A stretch of 63,684 bases of DNA, the filler included, from Octopus bimaculoides (taxonomy: Eukaryota): assembly GCF_001194135.2 (NCBI RefSeq). It is 5 parts of 5 records of this genome, joined end to end, with 100 filler letters (N's around TTAATTAATTAA, not from the genome) between each part and the next. Parts side by side here need not be neighbours in the genome. Positions count along the whole stretch, not along the records: positions 42,186 to 45,200 come from NC_068989.1; 4 more parts are not named here. One strand, written 5' to 3'. Position numbers and translations under genes: made by a program. Below the pieces are notes generated by a model. The model did no database searches and was not told the DNA's origin. It saw nothing but the letters and a program-made list of their open reading frames with translations. The first letter of the stretch is position 1, and every line of letters begins with the position of its first letter. Positions 41,464 through 45,200 of this stretch are shown here, one piece after another.

Positions 41464-42494
41464 CATTATTAAGGATCGAAAAATATAGGTATCTTTTGCA
41501 TACTTGGGTCGATATAATCGACTGCTACGCTCCCGCCAAATTTCAGGCCTTGTGCCTATAGTGGAAAGATTTATTATTGTCATTATTATTATTAGTAGTA
41601 GCAGTATTAGTAGTTGTAGTAGGAGCAGCAGCAATGGTCTGCTTCTTCGACGGTTGTTACCCGCAGCAGAAAACATCTGTGTTGGTAATGTTCTTTTACC
41701 AGTCGTGTAGATGGACAGTTACTCGTAGCTGGCGGCGTAGTGATCGCCATCGTCGTAGTTGTAAGAATTGTAACAGTATCAGAAGCAGCGATAGAAATAG
41801 AACATCGAGATGGTGATGGTGATGCCGACGATGATGATCGGGATCACGATCATGACTACAATAACGATGACGACGACTGCTAAAGCGGTGACGACAACGG
41901 TGATCATGATGACGATGACGATAATGTGACCTGCATTATCTGAGTGTGTGAACTGTCTTCACGGCCAACAGGCTGAGAGCAATGGCTGTCTCAGAGCCTT
42001 TGCATTTAAAACCACACACAGACAGCTACAGAGACCAAAACGCATTATATGTATACATACATATACACATAGTAATATATATATANNNNNNNNNNNNNNN
42101 NNNNNNNNNNNNNNNNNNNNNNNNNNNNNTTAATTAATTAANNNNNNNNNNNNNNNNNNNNNNNNNNNNNNNNNNNNNNNNNNNNTGTATGCGTAATTAT
42201 TCAATATATGTACTTACTATTTTGTTCCATTTCTTTTTTTTATATAGTTTGTAAACTTTCCGGTGTTGGTTTTGCGTGTGTGATCGCACGTGTTTCATTG
42301 AGACATCGTGCATAGGAGGTCCTGTGCTTTGTATTGCAGTGAAATTTCATTTTTTAAGAATAAAAAATATTCTTAAAAAAATTATCTTCGTTAAAAGACC
42401 GCTTCCTTCAAATCTTCCACCGGTTCTTTTGGCTAATTCCATCGATGTTATTGGATTAGATATGTTTTTGTATAGGGAGCCCGGTGTAGCACAT

Positions 42495-42564
42495 CCATGT
42501 TGTTATTCAGCCATGTTGTTATTCAGCCCGGTTGTTATTCAGCCATGTTGTTATTCAGCCCGGT
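42495..42564. repeat. 16-bp tandem repeat, four full copies plus a partial
   Basis: ccatgttgttattcag / cccggttgttattcag units. Confidence 0.9.
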
Positions 42565-42591
42565 GCTATTATTATTATTATTATTATTATT

Positions 42592-42649
<58 letters not shown>

Positions 42650-43597
42650 TTATCATTATCATCATAGCTTTTACCCTAAACCTGTTCGTATTTCACGCTT
42701 GATTCAAATTCACTCAATTCTCTGTAAATACTGACATCCTTATTTTTAACCATCGATTCAGGTCAACTGTGTGAGTCGATGAAGCGGCTTATATCTTGTT
42801 TATTTTTAAACGTTGGTTCAGCTAAAAAATCTCCTATATCGGTTTATATTTCTGTTGCTTAGATTTCTTTTCTATTGAACTCTTTATCATTCATTCAAGC
42901 CAATACTATTGGATCGACATATCTGTAAAAATAAAACAAATAATTTTTCTGGTTCTCTCTTCCAATATCGGAAACAATTGTACTTGTTGTAGTTGTTTCT
43001 GCTACTGTTGTTGTTGTTGTTGTTGATGTTGATGATGGTGCTGTGAGACAATTATGTGATTAGATTTAAAATAATGGCGGTGGATAATAGAGTAAGTAGA
43101 ACAACAGACATTAGGGCGGTGAAAGATAAACTTTATAAAACGACAGATTTGTATCTTGCAATGTTGCATTATGTTCCTTTTACGTATTAAATCTAGCCCT
43201 CATCATTGTGAATTTTGTTTTCAGTCCTCGAGAGGAGATGGCTAGATGCCGAGAGAAATCAACAACTACAACCATACCGCAAAAAAAAAGTGTTGTTTTA
43301 TAAAGGATGTACACCCCGTCTATTTCTTTACCTAACTATCAGTCTGTCTGTCAATTTATCTTTATATTATTCTCTTTCTCTGTGTATATATATATGTACA
43401 TGTATCCGCATTCACACTCTCTCTGCCTTTCTCTCTCTCTCACGCACATACATACACACACATTTATATATACATGCATACATACATGCATACATACATA
43501 CATACATACATACATACATACATACATACATACATACATACGTACATACATACATACGTACATATATATTATATTATATTATATTATATTATATTAT

Positions 43598-44069
43598 ATG
43601 GGTGGCTAATTCGCAACCTTACAACCTAAAGGCAGAGATATATACTAAAATGAACAAGGGTACTAATCAGTACTTGTATTGCTAGAAATAACAGTCGAAA
43701 CAGCTCAGTAACCACAAAAGCCCTATCTTAATCAGCTGACAAGGGAGGCAAACTCCTTACGGTCGCAGTTAGAACCAGATCACCGATGATTTCGTATTTT
43801 GATGCTTGGCACATCTTAATGCTCATCAGTGGCTCTTATTGCGCCTAAGGTTAAACTCATCTCAGCTTATAAAATTTTCGGTGAAATCAGACGTTAATTT
43901 CATAAACGGTAAAAATGAAAATTATAAATAATATGGGTGGCTAATTCGAAATTTTACAACTTAAAGGCAGAAATATATGTCACTAAAGTGAACAAGGGCA
44001 CTAATTTGCACCAGTATTGCTAGAAATAAGAGTTAAAACAACTCAATAGTCACAAAAGCACTACTTAAT
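43598..44069 (-). mobile_element. Retrozyme-like element: ~335-bp unit plus ~135-bp terminal direct repeat around a hammerhead
   Basis: 43598-43732 and 43933-44069 are direct repeats (~80% by eye, offset 335 bp) flanking a complete hammerhead. Confidence 0.65.
43755..43850 (-). ncRNA. Type I hammerhead ribozyme with extended stem I
   Basis: Minus strand reads ccuua-gg-cgca-aua-agagcca CUGAUGA g[cauuaa-gaugu-gccaa-gcauc-aaaaua]c GAAA uca-ucgg-uga UC ugguucu-aac-ugcg-a-cc-g-uaagg. It has an intact core, 7-bp proximal stem I, 4-bp stem III, G-C closure of stem II and an AUC cleavage triplet. Confidence 0.88.
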
Positions 44070-44159
44070 GAATAAAAGTATGTATACCTTTATGTAACGT
44101 CATATATGTACACATACACTGATATATACACATACAGGCATACATACATAAATACATGC

Positions 44160-44361
44160 ATATTTATATAAGAGCATTACTATAGAATAATGACACACAC
44201 TAGACTTCCAAAATAAACACATTTTTACCGAATTCGAGAAAAAGCAACTCTTAAAAAAAAACTACCTTTTTAAAACCTTTTCCTCGAATTCGGTAAAAAT
44301 GTGTTTATTTTGGAAGTCTAGTGTGTGGCATTATTCTGTAGTAATGCCCTTATATAAATAT
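44160..44361. repeat. Long inverted repeat / fold-back (~85-bp arms, ~32-nt spacer)
   Basis: 44160-44244 versus the reverse complement of 44277-44361, with about 4 mismatches. Confidence 0.9.
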
Positions 44362-45169
44362 AAATGAATAAATATATTCTTGGGAATAAAAAAATGATGG
44401 GTTTTTTTTCCCTTATGAATTTTTTACACACTAGCTTCCTGATAAAATTCTTATAAAAGATTTTTATTCCATTATTGAATTAAATACATGCATACGTAGA
44501 GACAAATACCGATATATCAGATGCTACACAGCAAACATTTTTGTCTTATTAAAATTATCTTCTCCTCTAATGAATGTATCATAATTACTAAATGTTATTA
44601 AAGCCTTCCGCCAATCGAGAATTCTCCAAAACTGACATACCTTTCAGGAAAAGGACAGGTTTATGGTCTGGAGAGATGAAATCGGACAATTGTCCTTCCG
44701 ATGAAAACTACTGAGCCAGAAACACGTGTCCACTACTGTCTTGTTATCTCTTGTCTCTTTCCTTCAACGCATATCAATTTTGGAGAAATTCTTTGGTTTT
44801 TGAGATTTCCACTTTATAAATGAAACTGGTTTTTAATTACAAATTTGTAATTGTGACATACGGTCCAGAGACAGAAATAATTGTAATGAGTCAAGAATTT
44901 CTTGTATGACATTCCAAATATCTGTATTTATGTATGATATTCAAATACATGCCTCTGGCCATATCAAGTCATAATTCTTAAATCAAGCGCGCCTAAATTA
45001 TGTGTGTGTTTGTGTCTGTGTGTGAGTGCGTGTGTGTATGTTTATCTTTGTATATGTCATGTATCTATGTCTATATCTGAACAATAAAATTGCCCCTCCT
45101 GTTTTTTCCCAGGATAGCTTGTATTTCTATTGTATGTAAAAGCACTCCCATATACAAACTTTTAGACAT

Positions 45170-45200
<31 letters not shown>

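What the first reader, a model, noticed from the sequence alone, without database searches (positions are those of the whole stretch)
43598..44069. Candidate cephalopod retrozyme: 335-bp hammerhead unit with terminal direct repeat
Seen: ~135-bp direct repeats offset by 335 bp (about 1.4 units) bracket the hammerhead, there is no ORF, and the element sits in microsatellite DNA. Established: metazoan non-LTR retrozymes are few-hundred-bp type I hammerhead repeats that self-process to monomers and circular RNAs and are copied by a borrowed RT. Inference: this is a more-than-unit-length cDNA of a ~335-nt circular RNA, i.e. a ribozyme-based non-autonomous retroelement family. I cannot confirm whether it is already described in this lineage.
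Basis: partly seen in the sequence, partly recalled or inferred. Interest (0 to 1): 0.92.

Follow-up and report, generated by a model that had tools for sequence, protein, structure and literature searches.

The report
Decayed solo hammerhead-ribozyme repeat copy
A genuine self-cleaving hammerhead ribozyme sits on the minus strand inside a non-coding 335-bp unit present as 1.4 copies; it looks like an old, dead-end copy of a "retrozyme"-type mobile repeat, a kind already known in many animals, but neither its copy number nor its source organism could be checked here.

Summary
43590-43732 repeats at 43925-44069 (offset 335-338 bp, 82% identity, E=1e-38). Between the arms, on the minus strand, lies a complete type I hammerhead (43843-43764; cleavage between 43778 and 43777). 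No shuffle in 20,000 gave a motif as good. Rfam scores it only 17.6 bits (gathering score 52) because helix II is enlarged. The element has no ORF over 42 codons, is 37% G+C and is flanked by microsatellites.

The retrozyme reading is the best fit but only partly supported. Unit size, composition, hammerhead type and a 5'-truncated 1.4-mer in ribozyme sense all match published metazoan non-LTR retrozymes. The ends do not coincide with the cleavage site.

Against it, the locus has one hammerhead, so it cannot release a monomer itself. It fails the published criterion of at least two ribozyme-bearing units. The arms differ by K2P 0.18, so the copy is old or came from unlike units.

Genome-wide copy number, permuted ends, circular RNA and the cephalopod attribution were untestable: every DNA and protein collection scan returned nothing. 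No reverse transcriptase or endonuclease remnant lies within 3 kb, and the hammerhead is not inside the repeats, which argues against a Penelope pLTR.

Verdict: probably a new member of a known kind, of modest interest.

The parts
43596..43930 (-). One full 335-nt repeat unit, read in ribozyme sense. G+C is 37% and there is no ORF.
   Evidence: Unit length follows from the repeat offset. The longest stop-free stretch is 42 codons.
43931..44069 (-). Partial unit of 139 nt, homologous to 43596-43732. In ribozyme sense it is the upstream, 5'-truncated copy. It ends about 30 nt short of where its own hammerhead would start.
   Evidence: blastn of the unit against the piece: 83% identity over 140 columns, E=6e-37. 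Alignment A1.
43596..43732 (-). Repeat arm within the full unit (the 3' part of the unit in ribozyme sense).
   Evidence: K2P distance to the other arm is 0.177, with 15 transitions and 7 transversions.
43764..43843 (-). Type I hammerhead ribozyme. Helix I runs 43836-43830 with 43777-43771 (7 bp), plus an outer stem 43843-43840 with 43767-43764. CUGAUGA is at 43829-43823. Helix II spans 43822-43794: G-C, a C/A mismatch, 3 bp, an AA/AA internal loop, then 4 bp closed by a 7-nt loop. GAAA is at 43793-43790. Helix III is 43790-43787 with 43782-43779, with loop UCGG. C17 is at 43778.
   Evidence: Pair-by-pair listing. Rfam HH9 alignment, 17.6 bits. Descriptor hit with helices 7/4/4 and 0 of 20,000 shuffles as good.
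43777..43778 (-). Predicted self-cleavage site, 3' of C17 (43778). It is the only one in the locus.
   Evidence: Position is inferred from the hammerhead numbering. Cleavage itself was not tested.
43446..43599 (.). Left flank: (ACAT)31 then (TATAT)7, abutting the 3' end of the element in ribozyme sense.
   Evidence: Tandem Repeats Finder.
44109..44162 (.). Right flank: a degenerate ACAT-type microsatellite starting about 40 nt beyond the element's end.
   Evidence: Tandem Repeats Finder and repeat families D1 and D2.

Best explanation
This is an old, decayed, 5'-truncated 1.4-unit insertion of a non-autonomous hammerhead-bearing short repeat of the metazoan 'non-LTR retrozyme' type.

Proposed mechanism, with shown and inferred steps marked:
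1. Elsewhere in the genome a master array of ~335-bp units, each with a type I hammerhead, is transcribed on the ribozyme strand (inferred).
2. Hammerheads in consecutive units cut the transcript into ~335-nt monomers, which a host ligase circularises (inferred from PMC7229834).
3. A reverse transcriptase borrowed from an autonomous element, most plausibly a Penelope-like element, primes on a nicked AT-rich microsatellite target and copies the circle or an uncut multimer for more than one turn. It stops early, leaving [3' 139 nt of a unit][full unit] in ribozyme sense (inferred from the anatomy, which is shown).
4. The copy has since accumulated about 9% substitutions per arm (shown, if the arms were identical at insertion).

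Because only one hammerhead was captured, this locus cannot itself yield a monomer or circle. It is a dead-end 'solo' copy.
For: - The hammerhead is complete and non-random: the core is intact, helices are 7/4+/4, and 0 of 20,000 shuffles are as good. Its helices I and III are at least as well formed as those of the experimentally validated mussel (6/4/2) and coral (6/4/3) retrozyme hammerheads found by the same descriptor.
- The unit is 335 bp, 37% G+C and non-coding. The published ranges are 150-450 bp and G+C below 45-50%, and the mussel units are 350-390 bp (PMC7229834).
- The locus is longer than one unit, and its ends (43596, 44069) lie 182 and 153 unit positions from the cleavage site. 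The template was therefore not a linear cleaved monomer.
- The truncated unit is the 5' one only when read on the hammerhead strand, as reverse transcription from the 3' end predicts.
- There is no tRNA, 5S or 7SL head, no LTR, and no RT or endonuclease remnant in 3 kb.
- Microsatellite flanks fit the reported microsatellite insertion bias of Penelope-like elements (PMC8557442).
- Solo 'monomer' copies are a recognised, common product of retrozyme families (preprint 10.64898/2026.07.22.740005).
Against: - Only one locus was seen, and no second copy could be found anywhere. Those collections almost certainly lack the source genome, so this is absence of data, not evidence of a single copy.
- The locus has one hammerhead in 1.4 units, so the defining tandem arrangement of ribozyme-bearing units is not met here. 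Tandem Repeats Finder does not call a 335-bp array.
- The arms are only 82% identical.
- The Rfam score is far below the gathering score. Helix II has a C/A mismatch next to the closing G-C pair and is atypically long.
- A non-hammerhead fold is 7-11 kcal/mol more stable in isolation.
- The circular fold of the unit is no more stable than shuffles (z=-0.92). The validated mussel retrozyme gives the same value (z=-0.99), so this test does not discriminate.
- There is no sequence similarity to coral, mussel or axolotl retrozymes beyond CACTGATGAG.
Confidence: 0.6

Rival explanations
1. It is a fragment of, or a short internally deleted derivative of, a Penelope-like element (PLE). In this reading the repeat is a pseudo-LTR-type partial tandem made by the PLE's own integration mechanism, not by copying a ribozyme-processed circle.
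For: - PLE insertions are typically 5'-truncated partial tandems with an upstream partial copy, which is exactly the [partial][full] order seen here in ribozyme sense (PMC8557442).
- PLEs carry type I hammerheads with an enlarged helix II (7-8 bp) (PMC4209133), and this helix II is enlarged too.
- Most PLE-type hammerheads occur as single dispersed motifs from truncated copies.
- PLEs favour microsatellite targets.
- The 2026 preprint derives retrozymes from PLE pLTRs, so the two classes grade into each other.
Against: - The repeat offset is 335 bp, not about 3 kb.
- No RT or GIY-YIG remnant appears in any frame within 1.4 kb on one side and 1.1 kb on the other.
- The hammerhead lies between the repeats, not inside both of them as in PLE pLTRs.
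- Helix I (7 bp) and helix III (4 bp plus a tetraloop) are canonical rather than 'minimal'.
Confidence: 0.17
2. It is the eroded remnant of a local satellite array, or a DNA-level duplication by unequal crossing-over or replication slippage, of a hammerhead-bearing sequence. No circular RNA or reverse transcription was involved at this locus.
For: - Hammerhead repeats were first described as satellite DNA: newt satellite 2 at about 330 bp, schistosome and cave-cricket repeats (PMC7229834).
- 18% divergence between arms is typical of old array remnants.
- The microsatellite-rich surroundings are recombination- and slippage-prone.
- The preprint itself invokes unequal crossover for array growth.
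Against: - A single tandem duplication gives exactly two units, not 1.4, so a further deletion would be needed.
- The truncation polarity matches the ribozyme strand.
- This rival concerns only how this locus arose. It would still be the same kind of repeat.
Confidence: 0.18
3. The hammerhead is a chance motif inside an unrelated segmental duplication.
For: - Rfam does not reach its gathering score.
- Helix II is imperfect, and the minimum-free-energy fold is not the hammerhead.
Against: - 0 of 20,000 dinucleotide shuffles of the 3-kb piece give helices as good, and only 7 of 20,000 pass even the loose descriptor.
- All 13 core positions, the G10.1-C11.1 pair and a C at the cleavage position are present.
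Confidence: 0.03

Closest known systems
Metazoan non-LTR retrozymes (Cervera & de la Pena 2020, PMC7229834), in particular the Mytilus galloprovincialis retrozyme of 350-390 bp
   Same: - Type I hammerhead with a complete core.
- A non-coding unit of a few hundred bp with low G+C: 37% in both this unit and the mussel Mg353 clone.
- A stable helix III, as in invertebrate retrozyme hammerheads.
- No clear loop 1 / loop 2 tertiary-contact nucleotides, as reported for mussel.
- The circular-fold z-score is equally unremarkable (-0.92 against -0.99).
   Different: - Only 1.4 units and one hammerhead, rather than dimers to multimers.
- Helix II is far longer: about 5 layers, an AA/AA internal loop, then a 4-bp hairpin, against 3-4 bp in mussel.
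- No sequence similarity beyond CACTGATGAG.
- Copy number and circular RNA are unknown.
Penelope-like element pLTR 'minimal' hammerheads (Cervera & de la Pena 2014, PMC4209133)
   Same: - Type I topology and an enlarged helix II.
- Frequent occurrence as single dispersed motifs.
- Partial-tandem insertion architecture and microsatellite targets.
   Different: - It has a real 4-bp helix III and a 7-bp helix I, whereas min-HHRs lack helix III and have a 4-5 bp helix I.
- The hammerhead is not within the terminal repeats.
- The repeat spacing is 335 bp with no RT-EN ORF.
Classical hammerhead satellites and SINE-like repeats: newt satellite 2 (~330 bp) and Schistosoma Sm-alpha (as recalled, ~335 bp with pol III boxes)
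   Same: Unit length of about 330-335 bp carrying one type I hammerhead per unit.
   Different: - No tRNA-like or pol III head was detected.
- It is not in a long array.
- Newt hammerheads have a 1-bp helix III and act as dimers, whereas this one has 4 bp.
- The Sm-alpha comparison rests on memory and was not tested.

Membership tests
Metazoan non-LTR retrozyme | Type I hammerhead with a complete catalytic core (CUGANGA / GAAA / UH) and three helices | tested here: met
   The core is intact and helices I, II and III are 7, 4+ and 4 bp. 0 of 20,000 shuffles are as good. The same descriptor finds the validated mussel and coral hammerheads.
Metazoan non-LTR retrozyme | The hammerhead lies in a short (150-450 bp) non-coding repeat unit with G+C below 45-50%, and there is no LTR, PBS or PPT | tested here: met
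   The unit is 335 bp with 37% G+C. The longest stop-free stretch is 42 codons. No tRNA or other RNA family was found.
Metazoan non-LTR retrozyme | Tandem arrangement of at least 2 consecutive units, each with a complete hammerhead (the operational criterion of 10.64898/2026.07.22.740005) | tested here: not met
   The locus has 1.41 units and a single hammerhead. The second arm stops about 30 nt before the ribozyme position. Tandem Repeats Finder reports no 335-bp array. Under that paper's scheme the locus would be classed as a 'monomer' or solo copy.
Metazoan non-LTR retrozyme | A multi-copy family in the genome, with arrays of varying length | not testable with these tools
   Scans of viral, metagenome and prokaryote-genome contigs, phage records and the protein collection all returned nothing related. 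No eukaryote genome is available here.
Metazoan non-LTR retrozyme | The monomer RNA is predicted to be highly self-paired as a circle | tested here: inconclusive
   This unit gives z=-0.92 with 63% of bases paired. The positive controls range from z=-0.99 (mussel) to -3.2 (coral), so the test does not discriminate for AT-rich units.
Metazoan non-LTR retrozyme | Self-cleavage, and accumulation of monomeric circular RNA in vivo | not testable with these tools
   This needs in vitro transcription and northern blots or RNase R RT-PCR. No transcriptome is available.
Penelope-like element pLTR | Hammerheads inside both flanking direct repeats, with an RT-GIY-YIG ORF (~3 kb) between them | tested here: not met
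   The hammerhead is in the unique segment between the repeats. The spacing is 335 bp. There is no Pfam RT or endonuclease hit in six frames of the 3-kb piece.
Penelope-like element pLTR | Minimal hammerhead architecture: no or 1-bp helix III, helix I of 4-5 bp, helix II of 7-8 bp | tested here: not met
   Helix III is 4 bp plus UCGG, and helix I is 7 bp plus an extension. Only the enlarged helix II matches (against PMC4209133).
Rfam hammerhead families (clan CL00010) | The covariance-model score reaches the family's gathering threshold | tested here: not met
   The best hit is HH9 at 17.6 bits against a gathering score of 52. The alignment shows the loss is due to a 19-nt insertion in helix II, while the core columns match.
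tRNA/5S/7SL-derived SINE | A small-RNA-derived head with a pol III promoter | tested here: not met
   ARAGORN finds no tRNA. Rfam at E<=1 finds no tRNA, 5S or SRP match.

The most novel reading that the evidence does not exclude
The locus is a fossil of an undescribed retrozyme family whose hammerhead carries a hairpin-extended helix II/loop 2. That feature drops it far below Rfam thresholds, so such families are systematically missed by standard annotation. If the source really is a cephalopod, it would be the first retrozyme family reported for that class, because none appears in the literature searchable here.
Probability: 0.35. Interest if true: 0.5.

Novelty: new member of a known kind. 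Interest (0 to 1): 0.3.

Why it matters
If the unit proves to be multi-copy, it adds one more lineage and one more hammerhead variant to the retrozyme class of ribozyme-processed circular-RNA retroelements. The variant is an insertion-bearing helix II combined with a stable helix III. It would also show that Rfam gathering thresholds miss real hammerheads of this architecture. The giant-squid genome paper counted only 235 Hammerhead_1 hits (PMC6962438), which could therefore be an undercount. It would not change the concept, since such repeats are already described as widespread across invertebrate phyla, including molluscs. This particular locus is a non-functional solo copy.

Tried and rejected
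1. Rfam on the whole piece at E<=1 gave no ribozyme. The hits to mir-297, mir-1277 and mir-466 are (ACAT)n artefacts. The hits to WsnRNA46, mir-9457 and MIR1888 come from the 234-bp hairpin at 44144-44377.

2. DNA pattern scans for other copies:
- Viral contigs gave two hits. Both were chance matches inside GC-rich coding DNA with no helices.
- Metagenome contigs, twice, found nothing.
- GTDB genome contigs, twice, found nothing.
- blastn against phage records found nothing.

3. Protein-collection routes into eukaryote assemblies:
- Exact look-up of 10 ORFs of the piece found none on record.
- Homology searches with concatenated stop-free translations of the unit and of the flanks gave no hit at E<=1. 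The organism therefore remains unidentified.

4. The circular-RNA stability z-score was rejected as a criterion, because the validated mussel retrozyme scored the same as this unit.

5. Homology to published coral, mussel and axolotl retrozyme clones was limited to the 10-nt core.

6. A SINE head (tRNA, 5S or 7SL) was not found.

7. A Penelope coding remnant was not found. The lone Gti1_Pac2 hit is below its cut-off and falls in low-complexity translation.

8. Target-site duplication: ACGTACATATAT (43556-43569) resembles ACGTCATATATGT (44097-44109), each about 27-30 nt outside the element. In ACAT/TA-rich flanks this cannot be told apart from chance, so I make no claim.

9. A second ribozyme on the plus strand: none was found by the descriptor or by Rfam.

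Full report
**Observation**

The piece (42186-45200, 32% G+C) contains a direct repeat at 43590-43732 and 43925-44069. The two arms are 82% identical over 146 columns, with two gaps (3 nt and 1 nt), at blastn E=1e-38. The offset is 335 bp, rising to 338 bp after the 3-nt indel. This makes one full 335-bp unit (43596-43930) plus 139 bp, or 1.41 units.

No reading frame stays open for more than 42 codons. (ACAT)31 and (TATAT)7 abut the left end, and a degenerate ACAT tract lies just to the right.

**The hammerhead**

Rfam found no ribozyme in the 3 kb at E<=1. On a 151-nt slice it reports a sub-threshold HH9 match on the minus strand: 17.6 bits against a gathering score of 52, E=0.042. Listing the pairs by hand shows a complete type I hammerhead:
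- **Helix I:** AGAGCCA/UGGUUCU, 7 bp, continued by an A/A and A/C internal loop and a 4-bp outer stem.
- **Core:** CUGAUGA, GAAA, and the A15.1-U16.1 pair.
- **Helix II:** it opens with the canonical G10.1-C11.1 pair, then a C/A mismatch, three A-U pairs, an AA/AA internal loop and a GAUG/CAUC stem with a 7-nt loop.
- **Helix III:** AUCA/UGAU, closed by UCGG.
- **Cleavage position:** C17 at 43778.

The oversized helix II explains the low covariance-model score, since the Rfam alignment shows a 19-nt insertion there.

I wrote a descriptor and ran it on published clones (PMC7229834 supplement). It recovers the mussel hammerhead (helices 6/4/2) and the coral hammerhead (6/4/3). On dinucleotide shuffles of the piece it hits 7 of 20,000 at loose thresholds and 0 of 20,000 at the observed 7/4/4. 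The motif is therefore real.

In isolation the hammerhead fold scores -13 to -17.5 kcal/mol. A fold pairing CACUGAUGA with UCAUCGGUG scores -24.1 kcal/mol. Activity of this particular copy is thus uncertain.

**Anatomy in ribozyme sense**

Read on the minus strand, the locus is [3' 139 nt of a unit][complete unit]. The hammerhead occupies unit positions 88-167 and cleaves after position 153, while the upstream partial copy starts at position 199. Three things follow.
1. The hammerhead lies between the repeats, not in them, so there is only one cleavage site. The locus cannot release a monomer.
2. The element's ends are far from the cleavage site. The template was therefore a circle or an uncut multimer, not a cleaved linear monomer.
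3. The partial copy is 5'-truncated only on the hammerhead strand, which is the polarity expected from reverse transcription.

The arms differ by K2P 0.177, with 15 transitions and 7 transversions. Either the insertion is old (about 9% per arm) or two unlike units were copied. At that divergence an intact 13-nt core is not evidence of selection; the expected number of hits is about 1.2.

**What it is**

Published metazoan non-LTR retrozymes have these features (PMC7229834; PMC7761336):
- type I hammerheads in 150-450-bp tandem units;
- G+C below 45-50%;
- no LTR, PBS or PPT;
- processing to 170-400-nt circular RNAs;
- presumed copying by a borrowed reverse transcriptase into cDNAs longer than one unit.

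Mussel units are 350-390 bp, and mussel hammerheads lack the usual loop-loop contact nucleotides. The present unit matches in size, composition, ribozyme type and stable helix III.

It fails the operational criterion of at least two consecutive ribozyme-bearing units (preprint 10.64898/2026.07.22.740005). It corresponds instead to that study's 'monomer' class, interpreted there as non-mobile offspring.

The self-paired-circle test was inconclusive. This unit scores z=-0.92, and the validated mussel clone scores z=-0.99. There is no sequence similarity to coral, mussel or axolotl clones beyond the core, as expected for species-specific families.

**Rivals**

*Penelope-like pLTR.* This is disfavoured. 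The spacing is 335 bp, not about 3 kb. No RT or GIY-YIG remnant appears in six frames. The hammerhead is outside the repeats, and helices I and III are canonical rather than minimal (PMC4209133). However, the enlarged helix II, the partial-tandem order and the microsatellite target are Penelope-like traits (PMC8557442). The 2026 preprint argues that retrozymes derive from pLTRs, so a Penelope-derived non-autonomous element remains a close neighbour of the main explanation.

*Local satellite remnant.* This cannot be excluded from one locus.

*Chance motif.* This is excluded statistically.

*SINE head.* None is present.

**What could not be tested**

Copy number, permuted ends, circular RNA and the source organism could not be tested. 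Every scan of viral, metagenome and prokaryote contigs, phage records and the protein collection was empty. 'Cephalopod' is therefore unverified.

In the searchable literature no cephalopod retrozyme is described. The giant-squid genome paper only lists 235 Rfam Hammerhead_1 hits (PMC6962438).

**Verdict**

Most likely (0.6) this is a decayed, dead-end 1.4-mer copy of a retrozyme-type hammerhead repeat. That makes it a new member of a known kind, of modest interest (0.3). Its one unusual point is a hammerhead architecture that escapes Rfam thresholds.

Noticed in passing
window 44144-44377: A near-perfect inverted repeat with 101-nt arms, 90% complementary, and a 32-nt spacer. It folds into a single hairpin of -121 kcal/mol and looks like a MITE or foldback element. 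It is unrelated in sequence to the hammerhead unit, and it causes the spurious Rfam hits to WsnRNA46, mir-9457 and MIR1888.
   Followed up: partly
window 43762-43846, minus strand: The hammerhead competes with an alternative fold in which CACUGAUGA (helix I/core) pairs with UCAUCGGUG (helix III strand plus loop). That fold scores -24.1 kcal/mol against -13 to -17.5 for the catalytic fold. It could be decay, or a built-in switch that keeps monomers uncleaved. One copy cannot decide.
   Followed up: partly
window 43556-43569 and 44097-44109: ACGTACATATAT and ACGTCATATATGT lie about 27-30 nt outside the two ends of the element. They are a possible target-site duplication, with short extra 'tails' like those described for Penelope-like insertions. 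In these low-complexity flanks this is not distinguishable from chance.
   Followed up: no
window 42495-42659: A 16-nt minisatellite (CCATGTTGTTATTCAG, about 4 copies, alternating CCAT/CCCG variants as a 32-nt period) is directly followed by (TAT)31.
   Followed up: no
window 43442-43570, 44065-44161, 45006-45087: Rfam sub-threshold hits to mir-297, mir-1277, mir-466, mir-3149 and others all fall on (ACAT)n/(TG)n microsatellites. They are artefacts of self-complementary simple repeats.
   Followed up: yes
window 44622-44657 / 44752-44787 and 42740-42766 / 42800-42826: There is a 36-nt inverted repeat (78% complementary, 94 nt apart) and a 27-nt direct repeat (78% identical, 60 nt apart). Their significance is unknown.
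   Followed up: no
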